A DNA stretch of 64,000 nucleotides from the IMG/VR virus record IMGVR_UViG_3300010938_000951, positions 186,001 through 250,000 of that record; one strand, 5' to 3'. The notes under the pieces were generated by a model. It saw only the letters and a program-made list of their open reading frames with translations, was not told the origin of the DNA and ran no database searches. Positions 13,553-53,943 of the stretch are shown piece after piece (the stretch's first letter is position 1; each line of letters opens with the position of its first letter). The position numbers and the translations under genes are program-made.

Positions 13553-13586
13553 GGAATGGGGATAATCAAAATATTATCCCCATTCC
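13553..13586. repeat. perfect 14-bp inverted repeat GGAATGGGGATAAT-caaaat-ATTATCCCCATTCC
   Basis: Read directly; extendable with TTGTC/GGCAA outer pairs; no U-tract on the + strand. Confidence 0.85.
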
Positions 13587-13623
13587 TTGGGCAATAATAT
13601 GGAATACCTATATACTTTCCCGT

Positions 13624-13630
13624 GATATAT
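13624..13630 (+). promoter_or_regulatory. motif A (T)GATATAT, extended -10-like
   Basis: 10 nt before ATG 13641, inside a CCTATATA/TATATAGG hairpin. Confidence 0.5.
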
Positions 13631-13640
13631 AGGAAGCACC

Positions 13641-13895
13641 ATGACCCAGGTAACATCTTGCAACTGCATTGTTTGTGCAAAAGAGTTCGATCCAGAAGAA
13701 CTTCAGAGCGTTGCTTTATCTAAAATCAATGTAACACGTTTTAAGATTTGCCAGTCATGCCTAGATCATTGTGATCCGGCCGAAGATTATCGTCAAGCTC
13801 GTGAAATTATTAGTTCATATTTGTGGTTTGCTGAGGCTAAGGGCTTGTTTAAAGAAGCCTCTGATCTCTTAGAAGATATTTCTAAGAAAAAATAA
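13641..13895 (+). CDS. small zinc-finger protein
   Basis: CIVC and CQSC pairs; SD AGGA. Confidence 0.7.
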   Translation: MTQVTSCNCIVCAKEFDPEELQSVALSKINVTRFKICQSCLDHCDPAEDYRQAREIISSYLWFAEAKGLFKEASDLLEDISKKK

Positions 13896-16710: not shown

Positions 16711-17219
16711 TTGGTAAAGCCAATACGGTACCTATTATTAAGTTATTCCGTCATTATGGCGTGCGTTTAGATGCGTATAATAAGAAAACGACTTGCCCAT
16801 TTAAATCTCATGCAGGAGGGCGTGAGCGTTCACCTTCTTTTTGGTACTATCCGGATACCAATACATTCCATTGTTTTGGTTGTCACAAGGGGCCTTCTTG
16901 TTGTGATTTTGTAGCTGAAATGGAACAGTGTACAAAAGTACAAGCAGCACAGAAAATACTACAACTGTATGAATCAGATGTAGATGAGGATAATGTGTAT
17001 AACGCTCAAGATTTTGAGGCGCGCCTCAAAATAATGATGGATTTTTCTGACACCGTGCGTGATTTTTATCAGACTTATTCGACCGAAGAATCCAGGGTAT
17101 ATGTTGAGCAAGCGTGCAAAAAATTCGACACGCTGAACCATAAAAAGAAGCTTAATAATGAAGCGCTGAGTCGCATTGTTGAGCAACTTAAAGAATACAT
17201 AAACCTATATAAACCATGA
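16602..17219 (+). CDS. CHC2 zinc-finger protein (DnaG zinc-binding-domain-like)
   Basis: CPFKSH...ERSPSF...FHCFGC...DFV; true start uncertain. Confidence 0.85.
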   Translation: MRTISNTSRSNSDSKTPGETGSVAAAFAGKDYYQELIGKANTVPIIKLFRHYGVRLDAYNKKTTCPFKSHAGGRERSPSFWYYPDTNTFHCFGCHKGPSCCDFVAEMEQCTKVQAAQKILQLYESDVDEDNVYNAQDFEARLKIMMDFSDTVRDFYQTYSTEESRVYVEQACKKFDTLNHKKKLNNEALSRIVEQLKEYINLYKP

Positions 17220-18409
17220 CTAATGCCATAATTCTTGGCGATGTGCATCTGGGTAAAGGAACAAACATTGGCAAAGGCGGTGTTGGTTCTACTCTTAATA
17301 GCCGCATCGTTGATCAACTAAATTTATTAGACTGGACGTTAGATCGTGCAGTAGAGCATCATGCCGATCACATCATCATCACCGGAGACGTGTTTGAAGA
17401 GCCTAGACCACATCCAGGTCTGATTACATTATTTATCGCATGGCTAAAGAAATGTCAAGTCCATGATGTTAGCGTTCACATCATTGTTGGAAATCACGAT
17501 ATTTTACGCAATGGGCTTGTATCAAATTCCCCGCTCGATATCGTTAGCGAAGTCGAACTAGAAGGGATTAGTGTCTATAAAGACATTAACACCATCATAC
17601 TTGGCACAACAGCATTTACACTGGTGCCATTTCGTGATAGAAAATCATTTAGTGTCAATTCTAATGCGGAAGCAATTTCGCTTGTACGCGATAGCCTTGT
17701 CTATGAACTAGCTAGTATCCCAACTACCTATCGAAAAGTGTTAGTGGGACATTTGGCTATTGAGGGATCAATTCCTATCGGCGATGAAATTGATGATTTG
17801 ACCAATGAGTTGTTTTGTCCTTTGGATATGTTTCAAGGATATGACTATGTTTGGATGGGCCATGTTCATAAGCCGCAAGTAATGAAAAAGAAAAATCCTT
17901 ACATCGCCCATATTGGAAGTATGGATATTTCTAACTTTGGCGAAACTGATCATGCAAAGCATATTGTCATCTTCAATTGCGAAGAGGATAATTGGACAAG
18001 GGAATTTTTGCCCACTAGGCCCTTGCAAAAGATTGCCATCAGTGTTCCAAAAGATACAGAAGATACAACCTCCTATGTTTTAGATGAAATTAAGAAAGCG
18101 GGCGTTCAAGATAAAGCGATCGTTAAGGTCGAAGTGTCTCTAACTTCTCCAGACTTGAAATCAATCAATAAAGCCGCTATCGAGAAATATTTGACAGGTC
18201 ATGGTGCCTTTAATGTAAATGCCATTTACGAATCTAAAAAAGTTAATCTTATTAAAAAGGATAATACCAATACAATCGATTCAAAAATGGATGTGGCCGC
18301 TGCTATTAAGACCTATGCACAAACATATATAGAAGATGCTCTGCGTCCAGGTTTTATTGAATTGGCTATGGAAATTCATAATACCTATAAATCCGAGGGC
18401 AAAGAATGA
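17216..18409 (+). CDS. sbcD: SbcD/Mre11-like metallophosphoesterase nuclease
   Basis: GDVHLG, TGDVFE, VGNHD, GHL, GHVHKPQ and GSM. Confidence 0.92.
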   Translation: MTNAIILGDVHLGKGTNIGKGGVGSTLNSRIVDQLNLLDWTLDRAVEHHADHIIITGDVFEEPRPHPGLITLFIAWLKKCQVHDVSVHIIVGNHDILRNGLVSNSPLDIVSEVELEGISVYKDINTIILGTTAFTLVPFRDRKSFSVNSNAEAISLVRDSLVYELASIPTTYRKVLVGHLAIEGSIPIGDEIDDLTNELFCPLDMFQGYDYVWMGHVHKPQVMKKKNPYIAHIGSMDISNFGETDHAKHIVIFNCEEDNWTREFLPTRPLQKIAISVPKDTEDTTSYVLDEIKKAGVQDKAIVKVEVSLTSPDLKSINKAAIEKYLTGHGAFNVNAIYESKKVNLIKKDNTNTIDSKMDVAAAIKTYAQTYIEDALRPGFIELAMEIHNTYKSEGKE

Positions 18410-20631
18410 GACCATCTAGATTATATGTAAAAGATTTTATGTGCTATGATGACGCGTATATTGATTTCTCACAATTCAATTCGGCTCTTATCATAGGCAA
18501 ATCAGATAATCCAGATGTTTCCAATGGTGTTGGCAAGACTACGCTTTTTAGAGCAATTGAATATGTTCTTTTTAATTACTCGGATGTTAATCTGGAAGAT
18601 ATTATTCGTGATGATGCTGATAAGTGCAGTGTAACTCTTGATTTTATTGTAGGTAACGAGGAATACAGAGTCACGCGCACACGCACGCGCAAGGGTACAA
18701 CCGATCTTACTCTTTACAAACGTACTGCGTTGGATGGCGAAGAAACAGAAGTATTGCATTCTATTAATGGAGATCGTTACATTCCCTTATTAGATGATGT
18801 AGAAAAATACTGGAAAGACATATCTGGACGTCGTGCCGCTGACACTGACAAAGAGTTAGCAAAACTAGTTAAGGTGAATTTGAAATCCTTTAGGATATTT
18901 ATTCACTTCTTACAACGTGATTTTGGTGGGTTAACAACAGCTACACCTGAAACGCGTAAAAAGATTTTGAAAGATGCTTTGAATTTAATTGTGTATTCAA
19001 AATTAGAAAAGCTTGCTAAAGAGAAATCGTCCGCCCTTCAAAAAGAGTCGGACAAATTTCGCACACTCATCAACAGCTTAGGGGATCCTGATGCTACTAT
19101 GGCAGAAATCTCTAGCAAATTAATAGATGTGGAAAAAGAAATTTCTAGTCGTTCACTTAAAGTTGGAGATTTAGAAGTTCAGATAAACGCAGCTAATGAA
19201 AATGTCAATAGGCTTGTTAATGAGCACTCTAATTTAGAAAGTAAATTCTCTAATTTGGTCGAGAAAGAACAATCTCTTAACGTAGAGAAAACCAAAATAG
19301 AAACATCTATTAAAGAATATACTACTAAAAAATCTAATGTTATTAAGGTTGCCCATGAGGCCGTAGCTGAGCTTAAACAATTGGAAGAAACTCAAATCAA
19401 ACTAGTTGATTTAGATTATAATCAAATAGATGTTCTTTCCGAAAAGATTGTTTCAAATAAAGAAAAAATAGCCCAACTAAGCCTTACTATTCAAAATGAT
19501 TTGGCAAGAGTCGATAAGTTAAGAAAACCTATTCCTGAAGATGGCGAATGTGAAGAATGTCGCCAACCAATTACGGCAGAACATAGAAAAATTTGCCAAC
19601 AGAAACTTGATCAGGAGTTGCGTGAGAAGCAGGTTAATATTCAGTCTTGTAAGAAGGATATTGCTGCATTGAATGCTGAAAATGCCGTTCATCAGCAAAC
19701 CATTAATACATTAACGCTTTCTAAACAGCACCTAGAAAGTATTAACAACAAAATCTCTGCCAAGAAAAAAGAAGTTACTGATAAGCGTGCCATTCATGAT
19801 GAGTATAAGGTATTATTGGATAAGTTTACCTCTGAATTAGAAGATAAAATTAAAGAGATGGATGCTATTACTGAGCAGCTTCAAAACTCTTCTGCGATTA
19901 AAGAGGCAAAAATTCTTGAAAAACAAATTCAAGAAGAGAGGCAAAAAGCAAAATCTATTGAATCACAGATTCTTATCAATAATAAAGAACTGAATCATTT
20001 TAATAGCACCAAAGCTGTTTTACAACATGATTTAAATCAAAGAATAGATGAAAAGCGCAAGAAAATAGAATATACAAAGTTGCTAAAAGAAATTGAAGAC
20101 AAGTTAGGTATGTACCCAGCAGTTGTTCAAGCTTTTTCTAGTACTGGTATTCCTAATTTGATTATACAAAATGTTCTTGATGATTTACAAATTGAGGCCA
20201 ATACATTGCTAGCTCAATTAAAACCGGGTCTACAATTATCTTTCTCAGTTGAGAAAACCGTAGAAAAGACAGGCGATCAAGCAGATACATTAGATATTCA
20301 TTATACCGTTAATGGTAAGAAACGATATTATGAAAATATTTCTGGGGCCATGCAATTAGCAGTTAACTTTAGTTTAAAGTTAGGTCTATCTTTCTTGTTG
20401 CAAAAATTAAGTGGCGTAGATGTTCGCTTCTTGTTGTTAGATGAGATTGATCAATCTTTAGATAAAGCTAGTGTAGATTTCTTTGCTGATATAGTGAAGC
20501 TCTTTTCTAAAGACTATACTATATTGGTCATTACTCATAATGATCGTTTGAAAGATAAATTCTCACATGCAGTGTTAGTGGAACAAGATATAAATATGGT
20601 ATCACGTGCGAAGGTTGTATCTTCGTGGTGA
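18406..20631 (+). CDS. sbcC: SbcC/Rad50-like SMC ATPase
   Basis: NGVGKTT, Q-loop LQRD, coiled coil with zinc hook CEEC, signature ISGA and LLLDEID. Confidence 0.92.
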   Translation: MRPSRLYVKDFMCYDDAYIDFSQFNSALIIGKSDNPDVSNGVGKTTLFRAIEYVLFNYSDVNLEDIIRDDADKCSVTLDFIVGNEEYRVTRTRTRKGTTDLTLYKRTALDGEETEVLHSINGDRYIPLLDDVEKYWKDISGRRAADTDKELAKLVKVNLKSFRIFIHFLQRDFGGLTTATPETRKKILKDALNLIVYSKLEKLAKEKSSALQKESDKFRTLINSLGDPDATMAEISSKLIDVEKEISSRSLKVGDLEVQINAANENVNRLVNEHSNLESKFSNLVEKEQSLNVEKTKIETSIKEYTTKKSNVIKVAHEAVAELKQLEETQIKLVDLDYNQIDVLSEKIVSNKEKIAQLSLTIQNDLARVDKLRKPIPEDGECEECRQPITAEHRKICQQKLDQELREKQVNIQSCKKDIAALNAENAVHQQTINTLTLSKQHLESINNKISAKKKEVTDKRAIHDEYKVLLDKFTSELEDKIKEMDAITEQLQNSSAIKEAKILEKQIQEERQKAKSIESQILINNKELNHFNSTKAVLQHDLNQRIDEKRKKIEYTKLLKEIEDKLGMYPAVVQAFSSTGIPNLIIQNVLDDLQIEANTLLAQLKPGLQLSFSVEKTVEKTGDQADTLDIHYTVNGKKRYYENISGAMQLAVNFSLKLGLSFLLQKLSGVDVRFLLLDEIDQSLDKASVDFFADIVKLFSKDYTILVITHNDRLKDKFSHAVLVEQDINMVSRAKVVSSW

Positions 20632-36635: not shown

Positions 36636-36675
36636 AAAGGCCCATAACCTATTTGGTTATGGGCCTTTCTGTTTT
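36636..36675 (+). terminator. intrinsic terminator after ssb
   Basis: AAAGGCCCATAACC-tattt-GGTTATGGGCCTTT (14-bp perfect stem) followed by a T-rich run. Confidence 0.85.
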
Positions 36676-36679
36676 ATTT

Positions 36680-36686
36680 GATATAT
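36680..36686 (+). promoter_or_regulatory. motif A TGATATAT(T)
   Basis: Immediately after the terminator and exactly 8 nt before ruvC ATG 36695; no usable SD. Confidence 0.55.
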
Positions 36687-36694
36687 TACCAGGT

Positions 36695-37267
36695 ATGGTT
36701 AAAACGGTCTTAGGATTCGACGCATCGAGTACGACTATTGGTTATTCTATATTAAGTTGGGACGAAACAACAAATAATATAGCCTTTGTCAAAGCCGGCT
36801 ACATTAAACCAAAGAAGACAGGATCTATTATTGAAAGAATAGTAGATACTAGAAATCAGGTTCAAAAAGTTATTGTTGATGCTAAACCTGATTATATTTC
36901 AATTGAAGAGATTATTCAATTTATGAAAGGCAAAAGCACAGCAAAAACTATTATTATGTTGACTACATTTAATAGGATGATTTGTTTAACGGCTTATGAT
37001 TATCTTGGTAAAGAACCTACTCTTTATAGTGTTATGACTATTCGTCATGGATTAAAGACCACCAAAGATTTACCAAAAAAAGAAGATATGCCGGCCCTTG
37101 TCGCCCAACATTTAGGAATTACGTTTCCCTACGAGTATAATAAGAAGGGCGGCATTAAAATCGAAAGCTATGACAAAGCTGACGGTGTTGCAGTGGCCCT
37201 TTATCACGCATTGGCCTTATCGGGCAAGGTGAAATCTAAAGGAAAGTCTAAAGGCAAGAAGAAATGA
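36695..37267 (+). CDS. ruvC: RuvC-like Holliday junction resolvase
   Basis: VLGFDASS..GY, ISIEE and DKADG.AVA. Confidence 0.85.
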   Translation: MVKTVLGFDASSTTIGYSILSWDETTNNIAFVKAGYIKPKKTGSIIERIVDTRNQVQKVIVDAKPDYISIEEIIQFMKGKSTAKTIIMLTTFNRMICLTAYDYLGKEPTLYSVMTIRHGLKTTKDLPKKEDMPALVAQHLGITFPYEYNKKGGIKIESYDKADGVAVALYHALALSGKVKSKGKSKGKKK

Positions 37268-43721: not shown

Positions 43722-44436
43722 AGATGAGATTATTGCTAAATTAGTTTTGGATTATCCTCCAAAAGATATTCATGAATGGCTTGCTGGCAAATATACAAAT
43801 GTCAGTGAAGCTAAATTTGTTGTTGCTGAAAAATCAATTAAAGTATTCAAAGATAACTATCTAGACGTCTATTCCATGATCCGAGAAGACATGATGAAGA
43901 CGAAACAAGCTGTGGCTACCAGCACAGAAGAACAGCTTGAATTAGCTGTTAAAAACAACTCTACTTATAAGAGTAAGATGTTAGAATTAGCTGGTAAAGA
44001 AATAGATGTACGTCAAATGGTTGCCCATTTGTGCATTGCTATCGAAACGCGCTTAGGTCAAGTATTTGATGAAATTCAAGAGGACCCACGCAATATCAAT
44101 ACAAAGATTGATCGTGTTTTGATTGAGTATGGTGAGTTATTAGGGGGCCTTTTGGAAAAATACTATAAATTCACAGAGAACCCGGCAGATATGGTTATCC
44201 AGCACAACGTGACTTTGCAGGCTGTGGATCAGCATATTTCGGTATTTCATGATGTAATCCGAGATGTTTTGTCTCAATTAGATTTGGAAAGCTCTATGTT
44301 ATTTATGGAACTTTTTCAAGCTAAAATGGCTAAGCTAAAGGCTCCAACTCAGGAAAAACCTCTAAATACGGACATGAAATTAGCCGAAGCCAAGCTACTT
44401 AATGAAACAATTAACCAAAAGTTAAACAATCAATAA
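43678..44436 (+). CDS. possible terminase small subunit
   Basis: N-terminal HTH-like segment (HPDKDEI..KL..D..PKDI.EWL), long helices and a C-terminal IQHNVTLQ segment; upstream of TerL. The function is inferred. Confidence 0.5.
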   Translation: MNKNALKKILEHPDKDEIIAKLVLDYPPKDIHEWLAGKYTNVSEAKFVVAEKSIKVFKDNYLDVYSMIREDMMKTKQAVATSTEEQLELAVKNNSTYKSKMLELAGKEIDVRQMVAHLCIAIETRLGQVFDEIQEDPRNINTKIDRVLIEYGELLGGLLEKYYKFTENPADMVIQHNVTLQAVDQHISVFHDVIRDVLSQLDLESSMLFMELFQAKMAKLKAPTQEKPLNTDMKLAEAKLLNETINQKLNNQ

Positions 44437-46274
44437 TGCCAGAAAATAAACCTTCTAAAACTCCAATTATCGATATGCCTTCCAAAAAGCAATTGGCAAA
44501 GGTTATTGGACCTTATTCTGATAAAGAATTAGAGCTTACTCCAGAAATGGAAGAGAAGATGAAGAAGCTTATGGAGTTTTTTGATTTCTATGGAATAGAT
44601 TATAGTAAATTCAAACCAGAGTTTCTGTCATTTATAACAGATAAGAAGGCTTATCCTAATTATGATCAGTATCAATATATTGCCGGCCAACATGATTTAA
44701 AAAAATGGATGTATGCTCTGAAAGATATCCACTACAAACAAAAAGCGGGATTCCCATATCGTGAGGCTATTAAACGAGCAACTCAAGGTTGGGCGAAGAT
44801 GGAAATTTATGATTTCCTAAATTGGCTAAGGTTTTACGAAGAAGGGGCTCACATGAAATATAAGTTTGCACAAGTCTGGTATGAAAATGGTCAGCCAGGT
44901 TACTTCTTACATATAAAGCCAGATGCTCCTAAGGAGCCAGCACCTCATTACGATGCTAATGCTGTCAATGACGCTCGTGAAGAGGCAGAGCGCAGAGAAG
45001 AAAAAAGACAGCTTATTGAAAAACAACGTTCTAAGATTATAGGACGTTTGGATTCTGCGGAAAAACTTTTGCGCTCTCAAGAGGGTCAAGAGTTTGCTGG
45101 TAAAGAGTTAGAAAATTTGATGGAAGCTATTTACACTCTTAAAAAGAAAGTGCAGCTTGTTAATAAACTTAGCGTCTCTACTCGTTTGTATGAAGACATG
45201 ATCGTTCGTGAAGGAAATGTTCTTAAGCGTAATGGTTTTACCAAAGCTGCTGAAGTTTTATATTCTTTGGCTCAAACTCCTGGTGCGTCTGGAGAATCTG
45301 CTCAAGGCACACCAGAGGCTGGTGCTGTTCCACCACCATCCCCACCAGCAGATCCATCAGGAGCAGGTAATCCTGGTGCTCCCGGAGGATTACCAATGCC
45401 ACCTCCGCCAGGCGCCCCAAATATACAGACCCCTGTGGGTGGTGACCAAAATGATCCCCCTCAACCAAAAGGCATTAAAGAATTCATTGATAATATGAAT
45501 GAGGGCAATAAGACAGATGCTTCAGAATCTGATGATGAATTAGAAGTAGAAGATTCTGAAGATACATTAATGGTAACAGAAGCTCAAGCTGTTGCGCCTG
45601 TAACTCCACCGCCTCCCCCGGCCGCATTGGAAGATGTTCCAATGACAGACGCCCCTCCACCAGATAGAAATCCTCCCGCATTCGTCCCAGAGGCTACCCC
45701 TAAAGAACCAACCAAAACAGAAGAAGAGCCATTAGAAGTAACTGAAGAAGATTTGCCACCACCAGGCGGAGATACTCCTTCTGGCGGCGCTGGTGCCAGC
45801 ATAGATAGTAAAATCGATAGTGCATTTCAAAATGTAACAATGGAAGAAATTGTATCTGAATTGGAAGATATCTCTACATATTTTAAAGTGCGTGAGATAC
45901 CAAGACGTTTAGCACGTTTAGATATGATGTTTGATGCTAAGGGAATTTCAGCTTATTTCCCAAGTTTAGCTGAAGCTCAAAACAGAGCTTTGGATGCTAA
46001 CAACTATATTGCTACTCGTATTGATGATATTCTAGCCAAAGTACGTGGAGCTATGGCTACATCTGATATCGCCACCAAATTAAAAACAGATCAAGAAAAA
46101 GAAAAACAGCGCAAACAGATGAGAAAAGAGCAAGAAAATGCTGAACTTGAGGGAGCAACTCCAACAGAAAAAGAAACGCCAACAGTAGAATTAGGTGAGC
46201 TAGGAACTCCTCCGGCTCCTCCAGCAGCCCCAGCAGCTCCTCCAGCGGCCCCACCAAGACCACCAGCAGTCTAA
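44436..46274 (+). CDS. hypothetical (putative internal head) protein with long Pro/acidic linkers
   Basis: 612 aa; KKAY, KFAQ, SLAQ and TEAQ borders. Confidence 0.8.
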   Translation: MPENKPSKTPIIDMPSKKQLAKVIGPYSDKELELTPEMEEKMKKLMEFFDFYGIDYSKFKPEFLSFITDKKAYPNYDQYQYIAGQHDLKKWMYALKDIHYKQKAGFPYREAIKRATQGWAKMEIYDFLNWLRFYEEGAHMKYKFAQVWYENGQPGYFLHIKPDAPKEPAPHYDANAVNDAREEAERREEKRQLIEKQRSKIIGRLDSAEKLLRSQEGQEFAGKELENLMEAIYTLKKKVQLVNKLSVSTRLYEDMIVREGNVLKRNGFTKAAEVLYSLAQTPGASGESAQGTPEAGAVPPPSPPADPSGAGNPGAPGGLPMPPPPGAPNIQTPVGGDQNDPPQPKGIKEFIDNMNEGNKTDASESDDELEVEDSEDTLMVTEAQAVAPVTPPPPPAALEDVPMTDAPPPDRNPPAFVPEATPKEPTKTEEEPLEVTEEDLPPPGGDTPSGGAGASIDSKIDSAFQNVTMEEIVSELEDISTYFKVREIPRRLARLDMMFDAKGISAYFPSLAEAQNRALDANNYIATRIDDILAKVRGAMATSDIATKLKTDQEKEKQRKQMRKEQENAELEGATPTEKETPTVELGELGTPPAPPAAPAAPPAAPPRPPAV

Positions 46275-46282
46275 GGAGATAA

Positions 46283-47053
46283 ATGAAACTCCGTGAACTG
46301 CTTCAAGAAATGAAGAGAGTCCAGGTAAATATAGGCGCATCTACGCCGTATATTTGCGGAGGTACGCCCAGAGATAAATACATGGGCAAATTAGAAAATA
46401 TTGCAGACATAGATATGACTACTGGAGATAAAACTGTAGACTATCTATCTCAAGAATTTTATTTAACATTACGTAAAAGGTATAACGTTACTAGAAAAAC
46501 TATGGATGATGGACATAGTACGATTTTCATTGGCAGTTTGAAAATTGATTTCTCTTCAAATTTTATTGTACCAAATATTGATCAAGAGCTGGCAAAATTA
46601 GGAATTACTAAACCAACAGATATGCAACGCGAAATGTTTAGTCGTGATTTTACTTGCAACTCATTATTGCTTACTACAGATTTAAAACAAGTTTTAGACC
46701 CAACCAAAAGAGGATTCAAAGATATTAAAGATAAGAAAATACGTACTTGTTTATCACCAGAAATTACATTAACATCTAATAGAAATAGGGTGGTAAGGGC
46801 TATTTATTTAGCTTGTAAATTGGATTTCGATATAGACGATTCAATTATAGATTTTGTGCGCCAACATCCAGATTCTGTAAAAATCTCAACTGAGAAATCT
46901 ATGAATGATAAGTTGAATGAAGCGTTCTCTAGAAATCCAGAGAAGGCTGCAGCACTTATTACACAAATGAATCTCTGGAGCTATATTCCAATTACAGAAA
47001 AAGTTTATCCATATTATATAAAACAAATTAAAGGTAAAACTAATGTCGGTTAA
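46283..47053 (+). CDS. class II CCA/poly(A)-type nucleotidyltransferase (head-neck domains) with variant templating motif
   Basis: GGTPRD, DID, SRDFT.N and DP..G..D; SNRNR in place of EDxxR. Confidence 0.88.
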   Translation: MKLRELLQEMKRVQVNIGASTPYICGGTPRDKYMGKLENIADIDMTTGDKTVDYLSQEFYLTLRKRYNVTRKTMDDGHSTIFIGSLKIDFSSNFIVPNIDQELAKLGITKPTDMQREMFSRDFTCNSLLLTTDLKQVLDPTKRGFKDIKDKKIRTCLSPEITLTSNRNRVVRAIYLACKLDFDIDDSIIDFVRQHPDSVKISTEKSMNDKLNEAFSRNPEKAAALITQMNLWSYIPITEKVYPYYIKQIKGKTNVG

Positions 47054-48940: not shown

Positions 48941-49573
48941 ATGGTTAAAAATTCTAGACACCAAGGTGTCATTAGTAGACAATCTGATGAATCTTATAGC
49001 GAAGATCATTGGTTGAAGGAGTTTGAAAACAAACTTCAAAAAACCAGCGTACAGCCTCGTGGTCATAGCCTATTTGATCAGATTAGCTCCATCATGAATA
49101 CTAAATCCAAATATCCATCAGTACAAGCTGCAGTTGATGATATGATGCAGCGCAGTGGATTAACAGCTTATTTGGATAATGTTAAAACATCTACAGAAGA
49201 AACTTCAGGCAAACCAAAGAAAACCGCTCAATTAAAAGAAGACTCTAAAATTCCTGATGTAATTAAAGCTAAACCAAGCATCAAACACACTCTAGAGAAT
49301 ATTATCAGGGAAACAAGAGGAAATATTCCAGTTCCAGCTATAATTAGTCGTTTGCGAGCCCTTCATGCGGCTGATATTAGTGATGAAAGTGCTTGGGAAG
49401 ATGAGAAACTCATTCGTTTAGTTAGCAGTTGTAATCTACAAGCCAAGAAGGACAATCCTGGAAACTATGATCATTTTGATGATCTAGGTAGAGGAGACCA
49501 TTCTACTGCTGATTCTGATATTGATGCGTCCAATACTGATGCATTTAACGCTTTAATGCCTGCAAAAATTTAA
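48941..49573 (+). CDS. hypothetical (putative head) protein
   Basis: 210 aa; KKTAQ. Confidence 0.75.
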   Translation: MVKNSRHQGVISRQSDESYSEDHWLKEFENKLQKTSVQPRGHSLFDQISSIMNTKSKYPSVQAAVDDMMQRSGLTAYLDNVKTSTEETSGKPKKTAQLKEDSKIPDVIKAKPSIKHTLENIIRETRGNIPVPAIISRLRALHAADISDESAWEDEKLIRLVSSCNLQAKKDNPGNYDHFDDLGRGDHSTADSDIDASNTDAFNALMPAKI

Positions 49574-49587
49574 GTGCTTTGCACTTA
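49571..49587. repeat. palindrome TAAGTGC-ttt-GCACTTA containing both convergent stop codons
   Basis: TAA 49571-73 (+ gene) mirrors TAA 49585-87 (- gene). Confidence 0.85.
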
Positions 49588-50091
49588 CCCAGCCTGTTTT
49601 TGAGTATTTCTAGTGGGCCTAATTACTATTTCAGGCTTATCATGTGGACAATATCCAAAAAATCCTTTAGCACAGTTGCAATTATAGCATAATAATTGAT
49701 ATTCTTCTTTAGGAAAGTTATTTTTAATTAGCCAACGGTATAATTTACCACCAGATTTCTTACCATTTTGTCGTCGATCTTCTGCACCATCATTATTTAT
49801 GTGATCAATAGTTAGAAATTCTAAGGTAGTTTCCCCACAACAAGTGCATTTGCCACCATAGGCTTCTATAATTTTTTGTTTAACACTAAGATCATAAACT
49901 CTTTGTTGTTCTCTTATTATTTCTTTTCTATTTGTATATCTTCTTTTGCTATATTCTTTACAACAAAAGATACACATATATTTAGCCTGTTTAATATCGG
50001 AAGGTCTAGTATTATCTTTAGTTAGGCTTTTGAAGCATACAGTGCAGCTTTTGCCTTCAAAACTATATTGTCGTTTTTTCTTATCTGTCAT
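49585..50091 (-). CDS. His-Me finger (HNH-like) endonuclease with N-terminal zinc finger, inverted
   Basis: CTVC and CIFC; YGGKCTCCGE..LTIDHINNDG..YQLLCYNCNCAK. Confidence 0.88.
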   Translation of the reverse strand: MTDKKKRQYSFEGKSCTVCFKSLTKDNTRPSDIKQAKYMCIFCCKEYSKRRYTNRKEIIREQQRVYDLSVKQKIIEAYGGKCTCCGETTLEFLTIDHINNDGAEDRRQNGKKSGGKLYRWLIKNNFPKEEYQLLCYNCNCAKGFFGYCPHDKPEIVIRPTRNTQKQAG

Positions 50092-50117
50092 GGGTATATT
50101 TCAGAATATATCCATGA
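50088..50117. promoter_or_regulatory. palindrome TCATGGGTATATT-tcag-AATATATCCATGA containing both divergent start codons; candidate bidirectional promoter
   Basis: 13-bp arms with one mismatch; G(A/G)TATAT lies 14 nt before each ATG. Confidence 0.7.
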
Positions 50118-51991
50118 ACAATGATACTTATAAAGAAATGTTTTATAGGTTTAAGGATAAGCTAGCTAATCTTGATCCGGTAGAATTTTGCCAGAAACAT
50201 TTAACACTTGAAGGAGAGCCATTTTCTCTCGTAGGCAACGGGTATAAACCTTTCAGCGATATCTATAGATACATTGGAATTAAGGCATTAGAAAAAGATT
50301 CTAAACCAGTTATTCTAGTAAAGGGACGTCAGGTAGGTGCTACTACCATGGCAAGCGCCCTTGAAATGTATTTCATGGGCTCTGGTTTATTTGGAGATGG
50401 ATTCCGTCCACCAATTCGTGTTATTCATGCTTTTCCTCAATTAGAATTAGCGGCAGCTTATTCAAAAACTAAACTCAATCAAATGATTTCTCAGGCTAAA
50501 ATCCCTGAGGGAGCCGTAGAAAATAAAGCATCTCGTCCAAAGTCTTTCATGCAGCAATTGCTTGATACTACGACTGCTACTAATGACTCTTTACATTTTA
50601 AACAATTCTTGGGCGGAAATCACTTGTGGATTGAATCTACTGGTGTAGATGCCGACAGAATCATGGGTCGTACCGCTGATATCATATTTTTTGACGAGGT
50701 ACAGAAAACTACCAGTGTAGCTATTGGAAACGCGCTTAAAATTTTAACCAACGCCAAATATGGTAAGCCAACTAAAGGCGTACAAGTATTTTTTGGAACG
50801 CCACGTCGTAAGGGATCTGATTATCATAAGATGTGGCAATCATCATCTCAGCAGTATTATTATCTTGGATGCGAAAAATGCGAAAAGCATTTTCCTCTTT
50901 ATACTCCAGGTTCTGATGATTGGGAAAAAGTTTGGATTCACGGTATGATTGTTAAATGTACCCATTGTGGTCATGAACAAGATAAACTACAAGCACAAGA
51001 ACGTGGTAAGTGGGTTCCGCTAAAAGATCCAAACGATCCAGATTGCGCAATGGTTGGGTTTCATATTAACCAACTTTACATGCCAAAATTTACACGAGAA
51101 GATATTGAAAAAGAAAAGCCTGGTAAACATCCGATCAACACAGAGCGCGTTTTTCAAAATGAGGTTCTTGGAGAGTTTTATCAAGGTGATGCTACCCCAA
51201 TGTCTCCAGAAGACATTCGTGTAAATTGTGCCGATTTCGAAAGAAAATTTAGCCCTCGTATTTTGCCAGCTAAAGGTGTAACGCAACAATTAACTGTACT
51301 TGGAATCGACTACGGTGCACGTTCAGATTTGGAACAACTAGCAGACCCAGAAAGAGTAAGACCAGCAGGACAATCTTATAGTACAGCAGTTGTATTACAA
51401 ACAAAAGGCCCAAGTATACTATCAATTGAGTTTGCTACCAAATTTAAACGAAATGACATAGAAAGCAAAAAAGGTATAATTGATCAGTTGATGAGACAGT
51501 ACAGTATACAATTGGCTATTGGAGACATTGGTTATTCTAATGACTTCTCATCTCTATTGCATAATACATACGGAGATAGATACTTAGTGTCTCGTGCTCA
51601 TAATAAAGTTAATGAGCATGTTAAGTTCAATCATGAAGCTTTTCCAAAAGAAATTGTTTTTGAAAGAGATTTTTATATTAGTGAACTTTACGATCAAATG
51701 AAAAAAGGATTAGTTAGGTTTCCATATGGCGATTATGAGAAAATCGCATGGCTTATTGATCATTGTTGTAGTATGGAATTAAAACCATCTATTTCTAAAT
51801 ATGGAGATCATACAGTACATTATGTTAAAGGCGGCACTCCAAACGATGGATTTATGGCATTATTAAATGCTTATTTGGCCTATAAATTCCTGGTAAGTCG
51901 AGGGTTTACAAATAATAATCCAACATTACACAATACTAAAAACTTGACGAAACCTATGGTAATTACTGGCTATGTACCTAGGAAGTTCTAA
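50114..51991 (+). CDS. terL: terminase large subunit
   Basis: VKGRQVGATT, FFDEVQ, FGTP, CEKC/CTHC, GIDYG, DIGY and NDG..ALLNAY. The start is ATG 50114, not 49946. Confidence 0.92.
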   Translation: MNNDTYKEMFYRFKDKLANLDPVEFCQKHLTLEGEPFSLVGNGYKPFSDIYRYIGIKALEKDSKPVILVKGRQVGATTMASALEMYFMGSGLFGDGFRPPIRVIHAFPQLELAAAYSKTKLNQMISQAKIPEGAVENKASRPKSFMQQLLDTTTATNDSLHFKQFLGGNHLWIESTGVDADRIMGRTADIIFFDEVQKTTSVAIGNALKILTNAKYGKPTKGVQVFFGTPRRKGSDYHKMWQSSSQQYYYLGCEKCEKHFPLYTPGSDDWEKVWIHGMIVKCTHCGHEQDKLQAQERGKWVPLKDPNDPDCAMVGFHINQLYMPKFTREDIEKEKPGKHPINTERVFQNEVLGEFYQGDATPMSPEDIRVNCADFERKFSPRILPAKGVTQQLTVLGIDYGARSDLEQLADPERVRPAGQSYSTAVVLQTKGPSILSIEFATKFKRNDIESKKGIIDQLMRQYSIQLAIGDIGYSNDFSSLLHNTYGDRYLVSRAHNKVNEHVKFNHEAFPKEIVFERDFYISELYDQMKKGLVRFPYGDYEKIAWLIDHCCSMELKPSISKYGDHTVHYVKGGTPNDGFMALLNAYLAYKFLVSRGFTNNNPTLHNTKNLTKPMVITGYVPRKF

Positions 51992-52015
51992 AGCGCCTAA
52001 ATACTGAGCTTTACT

Positions 52016-52022
52016 GATATAT
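52016..52022 (+). promoter_or_regulatory. motif A TGATATAT
   Basis: Intergenic between TerL and portal. Confidence 0.4.
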
Positions 52023-52068
52023 CATATTTTGTGTATTCTAGTAGAGGGTATAGTGGAACAGAGGTTAC

Positions 52069-53943
52069 ATGGCTGGTATTAAAAAATCGGGATTAGGAGA
52101 TCATCCGTCCTTTTCAGCAAAGTTCTTACAGGGCAGATCCACCACCCCTCAAGTAAGTGCTATTATGGCTCAGGGTGTTTCTGGAGAAAGAAGAGTTATT
52201 CTTTCAGACGAAGTAGACCAAGGATATTTTAGAGACGGTTCTGGGCCAAGTTTAAATAAAATGGCACTAAATTCTCCCACAAGTGCTTCAAATGTAGTCT
52301 CTTCAGTGGGTTTCAAGAAAAATGCTCAAGTAGTTTCTTCAGTTGGAGGAATGTTTCGTGGTATTCATGGAGATTCCGTTAAGCAAACTCCTGAAGTATA
52401 TTCCCCTCTTTGGCTTAATAGTAATCTAAACCTTCCCAGGGACCGTGCAACAATCAATGCATGGTGTCGTAGCTTTTTTGCTTTAAATCCATTTGTACAC
52501 AATGCTATTAGTTTACATAGCACTTATCCTATTAGCAAGCTTTCTATTAAATGTCCAAACAAAGATATTGAAAAATTCTTTGATGATATGATTGAAGAAA
52601 TTGATTTAATGAATATTTGCGTACAAATTGCCCAAGAATATTGGCTTTTAGGAGAAGCATTTGTTTATGCAGAATTAGATGAAGGTAAAGGCAAGTGGAG
52701 TCGCCTACACATTCAGAATCCAGATTTTATGCTTGTCAAACGTACGGTTGTAGCAAGCGAACCAATCATCATGCTTCGTCCTGATGAAAACCTCAAAAAA
52801 ATTATTTTCTCAAATCGTCCAACTGATATTGAACAACGTAAACAATTAAATCAACACATCATTGATTCTGTTAGACGTGGTGAAAATATTCCACTAGACA
52901 ATTTCCACGTATCACATTTGGCTCGTCGTATTAGTCCATACGAAATCAGAGGCACAGGATTACCTGTTTGTATTTTCCGTCAGTTAATGTTATTCGACAA
53001 ATTGCGTGAATCTAAATATGCACAGTCTGATAATATGATCAATCCATTGACTTTGGTTAAGATTGGTTCGGCTGATTATAAGCCAACTTTTGCTGACCTA
53101 GAAGCTTGGAGAAGTGTATTTGAAGAAGCGCAGTACGATAAAGACTTTAAGATATTTACCCATGAAGGAGTAGCGGTTGAAAGAGTAGGTTGGGGACAGG
53201 GAATCTATGATATCTCTGGAGATATTACTCAGCTACTTAAAGAAATTTTTATTGGGTTATTCGTACCACCTGTTATGATGGATGGTGGCGATACTACCAC
53301 TTATGCTAATGCTGGTGTAGCTTTGGACGTTCTTCGTCAGAGGTACATGCAGTTCCGTAACATGATGTCCATTTGGTTAAAGAATAAGATTTTTGCTCCA
53401 ATCTCCAAAATTCAAGGGTTTTATGACTACTCTGGTGGAGAGAAACAACTTATTGTTCCTGAAATTGATTGGAATCACATGTCATTATTTGATGCTGGAG
53501 ATTATATCAATAGTTTAATGACATTATCTCAAGGACAAGCGGATCAAAAGAGAGTATCTATTCATACTCTTTATCGTTCATTGGGTCTTGAGTACGAAGA
53601 TGAAGTACGTAAAATGCGTAAAGAAAATATTCAAAATGCAATTGCTAAGAAAGAAATTGCCGCGTTAGATCAAATGGATCTAAATGCTCTTCGTGCTTTG
53701 GATGATGAGGATGAAATTCCAGAACCAAAACAACCGGGTGCTGGACAAGAACAACCAGTACCAGGAGAGATGCCAGGAGGAGCACCGGGTGGATTACCAG
53801 ATTTGGGTCTACCAGGCGGTGGCCCTCCACCACCTCCACCACCAGGTGGCGGTGGACCTCCACCACCACCTCCTCCGCCACCAGAAGGCGGTCCACCAGG
53901 CGGTGGACCTCCAGCAGGCGGAGCACCTCCACCAGCTCCATAA
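52069..53943 (+). CDS. portal protein with Pro/Gly-rich C-terminal tail
   Basis: Follows TerL; WCRSFF..NP.V.NAI, HLARR.SPYE.RG..LP and PLTLVKIG portal-type motifs; GAGG SD. Confidence 0.85.
   Translation: MAGIKKSGLGDHPSFSAKFLQGRSTTPQVSAIMAQGVSGERRVILSDEVDQGYFRDGSGPSLNKMALNSPTSASNVVSSVGFKKNAQVVSSVGGMFRGIHGDSVKQTPEVYSPLWLNSNLNLPRDRATINAWCRSFFALNPFVHNAISLHSTYPISKLSIKCPNKDIEKFFDDMIEEIDLMNICVQIAQEYWLLGEAFVYAELDEGKGKWSRLHIQNPDFMLVKRTVVASEPIIMLRPDENLKKIIFSNRPTDIEQRKQLNQHIIDSVRRGENIPLDNFHVSHLARRISPYEIRGTGLPVCIFRQLMLFDKLRESKYAQSDNMINPLTLVKIGSADYKPTFADLEAWRSVFEEAQYDKDFKIFTHEGVAVERVGWGQGIYDISGDITQLLKEIFIGLFVPPVMMDGGDTTTYANAGVALDVLRQRYMQFRNMMSIWLKNKIFAPISKIQGFYDYSGGEKQLIVPEIDWNHMSLFDAGDYINSLMTLSQGQADQKRVSIHTLYRSLGLEYEDEVRKMRKENIQNAIAKKEIAALDQMDLNALRALDDEDEIPEPKQPGAGQEQPVPGEMPGGAPGGLPDLGLPGGGPPPPPPPGGGGPPPPPPPPPEGGPPGGGPPAGGAPPPAP

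What the first reader, a model, noticed from the sequence alone, without database searches (positions are those of the whole stretch)
49571..50117. Inverted HNH gene bracketed by two palindromes that mirror both stop codons and both start codons
Seen: the left junction TAAGTGC-ttt-GCACTTA puts the upstream gene's TAA and the HNH's TAA at mirror positions. The right junction TCATGGGTATATT-tcag-AATATATCCATGA puts the HNH and TerL ATGs at mirror positions 22 nt apart, each SD-less with G(A/G)TATAT 14 nt upstream. The HNH cassette therefore carries copies of the first and last parts of the original intergenic spacer. Flipping it at the loop centres would give a tandem array with a directly duplicated spacer. 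Inference: the footprint of a nuclease cassette that duplicates the terminase control region on insertion or inversion, producing a bidirectional promoter. In read-through RNA the right hairpin would also bury the TerL AUG, and antisense transcription would cover the HNH. Established: HNH proteins often flank terminases (HK97 gp74), normally co-oriented.
Basis: partly seen in the sequence, partly recalled or inferred. Interest (0 to 1): 0.8.

Follow-up and report, generated by a model that had tools for sequence, protein, structure and literature searches.

The report
Mobile nuclease gene with mirrored starts
A selfish HNH nuclease gene sits backwards just in front of a huge phage's DNA-packaging gene and brings a small mirror-image control element that carries both start codons; this is real and conserved, but it is a variation on known phage homing-endonuclease cassettes.

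Summary
The window is part of a 267-kb uncultivated huge-phage record with almost all genes on the + strand, and the HNH gene is a lone inverted gene between a conserved 210-aa gene and TerL. Among about 75 relatives whose junction could be read, 43 have an empty junction, 20 carry a different inverted HNH (clade B) and about 13 carry the window's kind (clade A). Occupancy is scattered over the TerL tree, so this is a mobile, replaceable cassette.

The right palindrome travels with clade A. Ten loci keep CAT and ATG exactly 22 nt apart, inside 28-38-nt palindromes whose arms differ between loci yet stay complementary, even into codon 2 of both genes. Each arm carries a copy of a family-wide promoter-like motif (TGATATAT-like, enriched between genes and strand-biased) aimed across the centre.

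The left hairpin is not part of the cassette. It is a terminator-like hairpin on the minus strand, inherited with the last four HNH codons from the previous clade-B occupant.

Its model of a duplicated spacer and an inversion at the loop centres is not. This is a new variant of a known kind, of moderate interest.

The parts
48941..49573 (+). Conserved 210-aa gene directly upstream (here 'up210'). Its function is unknown. Its last codons (AAA ATT TAA) supply the T-run of the minus-strand terminator.
   Evidence: The ORF is. Orthologues of 43-75% identity lie directly upstream of TerL or the HNH in nearly all relatives. There is no Pfam, PHROG or NCBIfam family and no fold match.
49571..49587 (-). 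Left hairpin TAAGTGC/GCACTTA, which holds both stop codons. It is terminator-like for the HNH transcript: a 7-bp stem followed by AATTTTT on the minus strand.
   Evidence: The terminator scan lists it on the minus strand. The predicted fold is weak (-10.6 kcal/mol, z -0.6). The right arm plus TTACCC is conserved in relatives, but the left arm is not always complementary.
49574..49601 (.). Segment kept from the previous occupant or backbone: the hairpin, the HNH stop and the last four HNH codons (KQAG).
   Evidence: The DNA is identical to that of the clade-B HNH alleles in the nearest backbones (L008, L015, L079). Other clade-A genes have unrelated tails.
49585..50091 (-). HNH (beta-beta-alpha-metal) endonuclease gene of 168 aa, clade A. 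It is the only HNH in the 267-kb record.
   Evidence: phrog_2255 HNH endonuclease, E 1.2e-10. Pfam HNH and Endonuclease_7 fall below their cut-offs. Cys, Asp-His and Asn columns are conserved. The model has pLDDT 91, and its best fold hits are the Gme HNH nickase, a Cas9 HNH domain and T4 endonuclease VII, all at weak E-values. It is a single copy.
49602..50130 (.). Approximate extent of the swapped clade-A cassette, relative to the nearest relatives. It holds the HNH body, the whole right palindrome, and the TerL ATG with its first codons. The right edge may lie as far as about 50173.
   Evidence: In blastn against L002, L006, L008, L009 and L015, homology stops 28-31 nt after the up210 stop and resumes 16-60 nt inside TerL. 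The TerL N-terminus MNND matches the clade-A carriers L081 and L083, not the nearest backbones.
50088..50117 (.). Right palindrome with 13-nt arms and a 4-nt centre. It holds both start codons.
   Evidence: It is conserved with covariation in 10 loci. The predicted + strand RNA hairpin is -16.4 kcal/mol (z -3.7) and the - strand hairpin -12.4.
50093..50099 (+). Promoter-like motif GGTATAT in the HNH-side arm, pointing at TerL, 14 nt before its ATG.
   Evidence: Motif statistics are. Family-wide conservation of the motif is shown.
50106..50112 (-). Promoter-like motif GATATAT in the TerL-side arm, pointing at the HNH, 14 nt before its ATG.
   Evidence: It is one of only 20 minus-strand copies in 267 kb, and the only one that sits just upstream of a minus-strand start.
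50114..51991 (+). Large terminase subunit (TerL), 625 aa.
   Evidence: Pfam GpA_ATPase, E 6e-14. phrog_675 terminase large subunit, E 3e-59. The start codon is placed by alignment with 80 relatives.
52014..52025 (+). Reference copy of the family's promoter-like motif (cTGATATATCAt) upstream of the portal gene.
   Evidence: It is kept in 53 of 59 distinct TerL-portal spacers of relatives.

Best explanation
The feature is a free-standing, mobile HNH endonuclease cassette of the homing-endonuclease type. It is lodged antisense between a conserved gene and TerL in a family of uncultivated huge phages.

Shown here:
- The junction is a hot spot. It is empty in most relatives and occupied by one of two HNH clades in the rest, always inverted.
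- In the window's lineage a clade-A cassette replaced a resident clade-B gene. The left crossover lies inside the last codons of the old gene, so the window's HNH ends with the old gene's KQAG, stop and hairpin. The right crossover lies inside TerL, so TerL's ATG and first codons came with the cassette.
- The clade-A cassette carries a 28-38-nt palindrome that contains both start codons 22 nt apart. Its arms vary between loci but stay complementary.
- Each arm holds one copy of the family's promoter-like motif (consensus TGATATATCA, itself palindromic), aimed across the centre at the opposite gene.

Inferred:
- The palindrome is a compact divergent expression module. It drives the nuclease leftwards and gives TerL back a promoter and a start with a very short or no leader. 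This would explain why neither gene has a Shine-Dalgarno sequence, and why only the inverted orientation is found.
- Clade-B cassettes appear to do the same with a single shared palindromic copy of the motif.
- The left hairpin stops the antisense HNH transcript before it runs into the upstream genes.
- The symmetry of the arms is kept either by selection for a hairpin that silences read-through transcripts (as in T4) or by template-switch correction of quasi-palindromes. The data do not separate these two.
For: Mobility:
- The junction map covers 80 TerL loci, three further clade-A loci found through the HNH (L081-L083) and two found by other searches (L162, L168).
- The HNH tree splits into two clades.
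- On the 81-row TerL tree the states are A 12, B 19 and empty 43. At least 16 changes are needed, and the window is nested among clade-B carriers.
- The sister pair L024 (empty) and L029 (occupied) gives the insertion boundaries.
- The window's HNH has a chimeric C-terminus, and its TerL N-terminus arrived with the cassette.

Palindrome:
- There are 10 loci with the same spacing.
- 91.9% of cells are paired and 6 pairs show changes on both sides. None of 500 shuffles reaches the observed covariation, and sliding the partners collapses pairing to 27-44%.
- L081 and L083 differ at 4 of 28 positions, all compensated, while their flanks are 81-86% identical. The window and L033 have identical arms although their HNH genes are only 55% identical at the DNA level.
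- 58 HNH homologues in other phages show no such palindrome.

Promoter-like motif:
- G[AG]TATAT occurs 81 times in 267 kb. 36 copies lie in the 14% of DNA that is intergenic (p 3e-11). Among the intergenic copies 31 are on the + strand and 5 on the - strand.
- The motif is kept upstream of the portal gene in 53 of 59 relatives.
- It follows terminators at 13553-13644 and 36636-36698.
- Clade-B genes have TGATATAT (0-2 mismatches) exactly 8 nt before their ATG in 12 of 13 distinct junctions.

Terminator: minus-strand hit.

Precedent: phage T4 has an antisense homing endonuclease gene flanked by terminators, host promoters embedded in homing endonuclease genes, and promoters placed inside inhibitory hairpins (PMC2988022).
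Against: - No transcription start, transcript or nuclease activity was measured. No RNA run holds this sequence.
- The motif in several clade-A arms (GGGAATATT, GGCAATATT, GGTAATATC) is a weaker match to the consensus than in the window.
- A promoter function alone does not require the arms to match each other.
- Three clade-A loci (L040, L059, L078) lack the palindrome, and L082, L168 and L162 have 2-3 arm mismatches. Perfect symmetry is therefore not essential.
- The left hairpin is weak (z below 1), and its left arm is not complementary in several relatives.
- The homing site is unknown.
- The empty-allele records are fragments (16-34% complete), so an HNH elsewhere in those genomes is not excluded.
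Confidence: 0.6

Rival explanations
1. The symmetry exists mainly for an RNA hairpin, as in T4 promoter-in-hairpin gating. Read-through + strand transcripts, which are antisense to the HNH, would fold the two arms together and bury the Shine-Dalgarno-less TerL AUG. Transcripts that start at the motif inside the left arm would lack that arm and be translated. This can coexist with the main explanation.
For: The predicted + strand hairpin is -16.4 kcal/mol with z -3.7. Covariation includes the first base of codon 2 of both genes. The three single transition mismatches read as G-U on the + strand (window, L033, L162). The motif lies in the 5' arm, 14 nt from the ATG. T4 precedents are I-TevI, segB, mobE, soc and e (PMC2988022).
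Against: TerL in clade-B and empty alleles has no such hairpin, so TerL itself does not need gating. Five of ten loci have perfect Watson-Crick arms, and in L025, L081 and L083 the centre is also self-complementary, which fits DNA-level symmetry as well. A count of 3 G-U on + against 1 on - is no evidence. No transcripts are known.
Confidence: 0.3
2. The palindrome is a mutational by-product. An inverted duplication of the TerL start region gave the incoming HNH a start codon and signals. Replication template switching at quasi-palindromes then kept the arms alike without selection for symmetry.
For: The palindromes extend 1-8 nt into both coding regions, so both proteins begin MN, MS or MD in L081, L083, L025 and L030. 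The arms are perfect in half of the loci. Template switching that perfects quasi-palindromes is an established mechanism (PMC7202029).
Against: Arms are identical between lineages whose flanking genes are only 55-72% identical at the DNA level (window and L033; L025 and L083). That argues for purifying selection on the arm sequence itself. The spacing of 22 nt never varies.
Confidence: 0.25
3. The palindrome is a binding or cutting site for a symmetric protein. This could be the HNH itself acting as an autorepressor (as I-TevI does at its promoter), or an endonuclease-VII-like nuclease acting on an extruded cruciform.
For: The invariant half-sites CATGG...ATAT are symmetric. There is weak resemblance to Endonuclease_7 and T4 endonuclease VII. 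I-TevI is a precedent for autorepression.
Against: The variable positions inside the half-sites change freely between close relatives. The Endonuclease_7 score is below Pfam's cut-off. Self-cleavage at the cassette edge would be harmful. No binding data exist.
Confidence: 0.1
4. The HNH is a packaging accessory of the terminase, of the HK97 gp74 type, rather than a selfish element.
For: It is adjacent to TerL. HNH genes also sit just downstream of TerL in other relatives (L052, L057, L072, L075, L088).
Against: It is absent from the junction in 43 of 74 scored relatives. Two unrelated clades replace each other there. No HNH lies within 70-145 kb in five empty-allele records. It is antisense to TerL.
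Confidence: 0.1
5. Insertion or inversion of the cassette duplicates the ends of the original spacer, and the cassette can flip at the two loop centres.
For: It rests on the geometry of the two palindromes only. L082 and L168 have arms of two different types, which would fit exchange near the centre.
Against: Empty alleles do not show the predicted joint. The left palindrome occurs whole in empty alleles and beside clade-B genes. The cassette boundaries lie outside both loop centres. None of the 33 occupied loci on the trees, nor L168, has the forward orientation, and the laid contigs show no joints.
Confidence: 0.04

Closest known systems
Free-standing homing endonuclease genes of T4-like phages (seg and mob genes; 'intronless homing')
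   Same: It is a nuclease gene in an intergenic site next to an essential conserved gene. Its distribution among relatives is sporadic, and flanking sequence has been co-converted. T4 segD is likewise antisense to its neighbours and flanked by terminators. Several seg and mob genes carry the promoter of the downstream essential gene (PMC2988022).
   Different: Here the orientation is always antisense. The cassette replaces the start codon and first codons of the neighbouring gene. Both start codons lie inside one conserved palindrome. Homing itself was not shown.
Promoter-inside-hairpin translational control (T4 I-TevI, I-TevII, I-TevIII, segB; Aeh1 mobE; T4 soc and e)
   Same: A stable hairpin covers the initiation region, and a late-type promoter motif lies within the hairpin, so transcripts started there would escape it (geometry).
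   Different: Here the arrangement is symmetric and would serve two divergent genes. It covers a bare AUG rather than a ribosome binding site. Transcription starts are not mapped.
HK97 gp74-type HNH proteins of packaging machines
   Same: It is an HNH protein encoded next to the terminase genes.
   Different: It is not conserved across the family, it is antisense, and it is replaceable by another HNH clade.
Quasi-palindrome template-switch mutagenesis (E. coli, yeast)
   Same: It offers a known way for closely spaced inverted repeats to become and stay perfect (PMC7202029).
   Different: Here it would act over evolutionary time on a regulatory element. This is not demonstrated.
T4 late promoters (TATAAATA, a -10-type element alone; from my own knowledge)
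   Same: It is a short AT-rich motif without an evident -35 element, repeated upstream of structural genes on the coding strand.
   Different: The consensus is different (TGATATATCA) and is itself palindromic. The polymerase and factor that would read it are unknown.

Membership tests
Free-standing homing endonuclease gene (HNH class) | Encodes an HNH (beta-beta-alpha-metal) nuclease | tested here: met
   phrog_2255, E 1.2e-10. CxCC, DH, N and CxxC columns are conserved. The model has pLDDT 91 and its top fold hits are HNH nucleases. The Pfam HNH score of 16.7 is below the 21.4 cut-off.
Free-standing homing endonuclease gene (HNH class) | Sporadic presence at one fixed site among close relatives | tested here: met
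   States are A 12, B 19 and empty 43 on the TerL tree, needing at least 16 changes. Sister pairs such as L024/L029, L025/L026 and L059/L062 differ in occupancy.
Free-standing homing endonuclease gene (HNH class) | Lateral transfer with co-conversion of flanking sequence | tested here: met
   The window's TerL is nested among clade-B carriers, yet the window has a clade-A gene. The C-terminus is chimeric and the TerL N-terminus was imported. As a hint only, one metagenome contig is 99% identical over the HNH body while the flanking contigs are about 92% identical.
Free-standing homing endonuclease gene (HNH class) | Site-specific cleavage of the endonuclease-free allele | not testable with these tools
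   This needs purified protein and empty-junction DNA.
HK97 gp74-type packaging HNH | Adjacent to the terminase genes | tested here: met
   There are 22 nt between the HNH and TerL start codons.
HK97 gp74-type packaging HNH | Conserved in the phage family as part of the packaging module | tested here: not met
   43 of 74 scored junctions are empty. No HNH was found in five empty-allele records of 70-145 kb.
HK97 gp74-type packaging HNH | Stimulates terminase cutting at cos | not testable with these tools
   This is a biochemical assay.
T4-type promoter-inside-hairpin control | A stable hairpin covers the translation start | tested here: met
   -16.4 kcal/mol, z -3.7, with the AUG inside the stem. 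Pairing is kept across 9 aligned loci. This is a prediction only.
T4-type promoter-inside-hairpin control | A promoter inside the hairpin gives transcripts that lack the 5' arm | tested here: inconclusive
   The promoter-like motif lies in the 5' arm, 14 nt from the ATG. The transcription start is not mapped and no RNA data exist.
Intrinsic terminator (left hairpin) | A G+C-containing stem followed by a T-run on the transcribed strand | tested here: met
   On the minus strand there is a 7-bp stem with 3 G-C pairs, followed by AATTTTT.
Intrinsic terminator (left hairpin) | Pairing conserved in relatives | tested here: inconclusive
   The hairpin is perfect in L006, L008, L015, L079, L037 and L041. 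The left arm is not complementary in L009-L011, L024, L029, L055 and L056. The fold z-score is -0.6.
Endonuclease VII family (PF02945) | Reaches Pfam's gathering score | tested here: not met
   16.4 bits against a cut-off of 23.6. PHROG endonuclease VII families hit at 2e-6 and 5e-6. The fold hit 1en7 has E 0.42.

The most novel reading that the evidence does not exclude
The clade-A palindrome may be a self-maintaining part of the mobile element. In this reading it is a cruciform- or hairpin-forming, bidirectional start module that the cassette installs in place of TerL's own start. Its arms would be kept alike by hairpin-templated correction. It would also be recognised, as a structure or as a symmetric operator, by the cassette's own endonuclease-VII-like HNH, coupling the element's expression, its immunity and the host's packaging gene in one 30-bp device.
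Probability: 0.12. Interest if true: 0.7.

Novelty: new variant of a known kind. Interest (0 to 1): 0.45.

Why it matters
It gives a clear natural example of how a selfish nuclease gene can sit antisense in front of an essential late gene without harming it. The cassette brings or shares a symmetric promoter-like element and even supplies the neighbour's start codon. That makes loss of the cassette costly and explains the fixed orientation.

It also provides a candidate late-promoter motif (TGATATATCA-like) for a family of uncultivated phages of roughly 430 kb (267 kb at an estimated 62% completeness). And it offers a compact 60-bp element in which the roles of promoter symmetry, RNA hairpin and template-switch correction could be separated by simple reporter experiments.

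It does not change how homing endonucleases or terminases are understood.

Tried and rejected
- Both junction motifs as genome-wide repeats: neither AATATATCCATG nor CTTTGCACTTACCC recurs beyond chance in the window. TTTGCACTTACCC is unique in the 267-kb record, so it is not a repeated promoter or pac-like repeat.
- Close DNA relatives among cultured phages: none. The best TerL match is 27% identical.
- PDB sequence search with the HNH: nothing significant.
- NCBIfam: nothing.
- Function of the upstream 210-aa gene, which could be a small terminase by position: no family, no atlas lead, a model of only moderate confidence (pLDDT 71) and no fold match. It is left unknown.
- RNA evidence: no RNA run holds the sequence.
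- Reads for mixed orientation: only short, low-depth contigs were available. They show no joints, and no contig spans the palindrome, which is an assembler limit and not a finding.
- Metagenome scan for more clade-A junctions: it yielded only one new locus, L168, so the G-U versus A-C strand test stays underpowered (3 against 1).
- Single-linkage clustering of the HNH ORFs chained everything together. A tree was used instead.
- One pattern hit, L164, is a chance match inside an unrelated gene.
Full report
**1. What is in the sequence**

The window belongs to a 266,899-base IMG/VR virus record with an estimated completeness of 62%. Nearly all of its genes lie on the + strand.

The finding covers a single inverted gene at 49585-50091. 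It lies between a conserved 210-aa gene (48941-49573, here called up210) and the large terminase gene TerL (50114-51991). The portal gene follows at 52069.

The inverted gene encodes an HNH-type nuclease:
- It matches phrog_2255 at E 1.2e-10. The Pfam HNH and Endonuclease_7 matches are below threshold.
- Cys, Asp-His and Asn columns are conserved.
- A confident model (pLDDT 91) has as its best, though weak, fold matches the Gme HNH nickase, a Cas9 HNH domain and T4 endonuclease VII.
- It is the only HNH gene in the record.

Both palindromes are exactly as described. TAAGTGC-ttt-GCACTTA lies at 49571-49587 and holds both stop codons. TCATGGGTATATT-tcag-AATATATCCATGA lies at 50088-50117 and holds both start codons, which are 22 nt apart. 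A GGTATAT or GATATAT motif lies 14 nt upstream of each ATG.

On chance alone the left hairpin is ordinary. Perfect 7-bp hairpins occur 44 times in the window, against 18.6 in shuffles. The right palindrome is only mildly unusual: 3 such hairpins in the window against 0.67 expected.

**2. The junction is a hot spot for mobile HNH genes**

TerL relatives were fetched from IMG/VR (80 loci, 67-92% identical), and the junction was mapped in each. Further loci came from searches with the HNH protein and with a DNA pattern.

On an 81-row TerL tree, 43 loci have an empty junction, with a gap of -1 to 80 nt. Nineteen carry an inverted HNH of clade B, which is about 29% identical to the window's protein. 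Twelve carry clade A, the window's kind. The tree needs at least 16 changes of state. Every occupied junction has the HNH antisense to TerL.

The window's TerL sits inside a well-supported group in which all other scored members carry clade B. The window's lineage therefore exchanged a clade-B gene for a clade-A gene.

The boundaries of that exchange can be read directly. Against the nearest backbones, homology runs from up210 to 28-31 nt past its stop codon. It resumes 16-60 nt inside TerL.

At the left edge, the window's protein ends ...PTRNTQ-KQAG. The DNA of KQAG, the stop codon and the hairpin is identical to that of the clade-B genes of L008, L015 and L079, which end ...PPEPE-KQAG. Other clade-A genes end quite differently. 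The window's HNH is thus a chimera that kept the tail and hairpin of the gene it displaced.

At the right edge, the window's TerL begins MNND, like the clade-A carriers L081 and L083. The nearest backbones begin MP(S/N)LNIENKE. The cassette therefore brought TerL's start codon and first codons with it. The sister pair L024 (empty) and L029 (clade B) shows the same kind of boundaries.

Five records with empty junctions have no HNH within 70-145 kb. This pattern is that of a selfish homing-type cassette, not of a conserved packaging component.

**3. The right palindrome is a conserved property of the clade-A cassette**

Ten distinct clade-A loci have CAT and ATG exactly 22 nt apart inside a palindrome. 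They are the window, L025, L030/L031, L033, L071, L081, L082, L083, L162 and L168.

The arms after CATG differ between loci. The arm pairs seen are:
- GGTATATT/AATATATC
- GGAATATT/AATATTCC
- GCAATATT/AATATTGC
- GTAATATG/CATATTAC
- GTAATATC/GATATTAC

Five loci are nevertheless perfect. In L025, L030, L081 and L083 the symmetry runs 2-8 nt into both coding regions, so both proteins start with the same residues. In L025, L081 and L083 the centre CTAG is itself self-complementary.

On the nine-sequence alignment, 91.9% of cells pair and six pairs show changes on both sides. None of 500 shuffles reaches the observed covariation, and sliding the partners drops pairing to 27-44%.

Two comparisons bear on selection:
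- L081 and L083 differ at four palindrome positions, all compensated, while their flanks are 81-86% identical.
- Arms are identical between the window and L033, and between L025 and L083, although the adjacent genes are only 55-72% identical at the DNA level.

Both the symmetry and the arm sequence are therefore constrained.

Symmetry is not absolute, however. L082 and L168 combine two arm types, with three mismatches. L162 has two mismatches. L040, L059 and L078 have no palindrome.

The pattern occurs nowhere else in IMG/VR apart from one chance hit inside a gene. Fifty-eight HNH homologues in other phages show nothing like it.

**4. Each arm carries a promoter-like motif**

G[AG]TATAT occurs 81 times in the 267-kb record. 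Thirty-six copies lie in the 14% of the DNA that is intergenic (p 3e-11). Of these, 31 are on the + strand, the strand of 292 of 319 crude gene calls. Copies follow strong terminators and sit 8-15 nt before start codons, for example at 13553-13644 and 36636-36698.

In the TerL-portal spacer, 53 of 59 distinct relatives keep cTGATATAT(C/T)AT within otherwise drifting sequence. The consensus TGATATATCA is its own reverse complement.

In the window's palindrome, one copy on each strand points across the centre at the opposite gene.

In clade-B junctions a single central copy serves both sides. TGATATAT, with 0-2 mismatches, lies exactly 8 nt before the HNH ATG in 12 of 13 distinct junctions. Its mirror image lies 12-13 nt before the TerL ATG.

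Many empty alleles also have such a motif 3-15 nt before TerL. Others have a tight junction of the Shine-Dalgarno type.

I infer that this is the family's late-type promoter. An ORF placed head-to-head with TerL would then be expressed from the same symmetric element, which would explain the invariable antisense orientation and the Shine-Dalgarno-less starts with very short leaders. No transcript data exist to prove it.

**5. The left hairpin**

The terminator scan finds the left hairpin on the minus strand as a 7-bp stem followed by AATTTTT. The T-run is supplied by the last codons of up210. It would stop the HNH transcript from running antisense into the upstream genes.

It is not part of the clade-A cassette:
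- It flanks clade-B genes.
- It survives with both arms in the empty allele L037.
- Its right half, with TTACCC, survives in L024, L055, L056 and L065.

These empty alleles look like relics of lost HNH genes.

The predicted stability is low, and the left arm is not complementary in several relatives. The terminator role is therefore plausible but not strong.

**6. How it most likely works, and rivals**

Shown:
- The cassette is mobile and replaceable.
- It carries a conserved, covarying palindrome with both start codons.
- The arms carry a motif that behaves like a promoter.

Inferred:
- Transcription diverges from the palindrome.
- The left hairpin terminates the HNH transcript.
- The cassette is hard to lose because it carries TerL's start signals. 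T4 shows the same with promoters embedded in seg and mob genes (PMC2988022).

Why the arms stay complementary is open. One reading is a T4-like hairpin that silences read-through transcripts. The predicted + strand hairpin is -16.4 kcal/mol and buries the TerL AUG, and the motif lies in the 5' arm, so transcripts started there would escape it. The other reading is template-switch correction of quasi-palindromes (PMC7202029). The only strand-specific clue is too weak to decide: three G-U-type mismatches on the + strand against one on the - strand.

A symmetric protein site, whether for autorepression or for cruciform cutting by an endonuclease-VII-like enzyme, is possible but unsupported. A packaging role like that of HK97 gp74 is unlikely, given the scattered distribution.

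**7. Comparison with what is known, and verdict**

The closest systems are these:
- The free-standing homing endonuclease genes of T4-like phages, including antisense segD with its flanking terminators and the embedded promoters for downstream essential genes.
- The promoter-inside-hairpin control of I-TevI, segB and mobE.

The differences here are threefold. The architecture is strictly head-to-head. The cassette supplies the neighbour's start codon. A covarying palindrome holds both starts.

This is a new variant of a known kind. Interest is moderate.

Noticed in passing
window 52014-52025; relatives' TerL-portal spacers: A family-wide conserved element, cTGATATAT(C/T)AT followed by ...GTAT..AGTAGAGGGTATAGTGGAA, lies upstream of the portal gene. 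It is kept in 53 of 59 distinct relatives. The core TGATATATCA is its own reverse complement. It is probably the late-type promoter of this phage family.
   Followed up: partly
window 13553-13644 and 36636-36698: Two strong G+C-rich terminator hairpins (arms of 13 nt or more) are each followed by a GATATAT motif and then an ATG 9-11 nt later. These are compact terminator-promoter-start modules.
   Followed up: partly
L006:3384-3400, L041 (left junction): In two clade-B alleles the usual HNH stop is mutated (TAA to CAA). The ORF runs five codons further (QVQST) and ends at the mirrored TAA in the other arm of the hairpin, opposite the stop of the upstream gene.
   Followed up: no
L017, L023, L064, L080 (empty junctions): Some empty alleles hold partial copies of the clade-A palindrome arms without an HNH gene, for example GGGTAATATT-ac-AATATATT and CATGGTAATAT. 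These are probably scars of lost cassettes.
   Followed up: no
L052, L057, L072, L075, L046, L067, L088/L089, L097/L098: Other relatives carry an HNH gene just downstream of TerL, between TerL and portal, in the forward orientation. Both flanks of TerL are therefore insertion sites for such genes.
   Followed up: no
window 49427-50485, run X2: In one sludge metagenome, a contig over the HNH body (49737-50063) differs from the window at 2 of 327 bases. Contigs over the up210 end and over TerL differ at about 8%. This may be a recent cassette transfer between diverged backbones, or simply mixed strains.
   Followed up: no
window 53750-53943 and 45300-46274: The C-terminus of the portal protein and much of the 612-aa protein at 44436-46274 consist of long Pro/Gly/Ala-rich low-complexity tracts.
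   Followed up: no
window 17216-20631: There is an SbcC-like subunit of a palindrome-specific nuclease (phrog_77, E 2e-64), with a likely partner gene just upstream. The phage thus encodes an enzyme class that processes hairpins and palindromes.
   Followed up: no
window 46283-47053: A 256-aa protein has a poly(A) polymerase / tRNA nucleotidyltransferase head domain (PF01743, E 4e-12). It lies three genes upstream of the HNH.
   Followed up: no
G000 (whole record): IMG/VR labels the 267-kb record a provirus. However, the gene content (DNA polymerase, terminase, portal, SbcC-like nuclease) and relatives of 340-480 kb look like a fragment of a huge lytic-type phage. No close cultured relative exists: the best TerL match is at most 27% identical.
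   Followed up: partly
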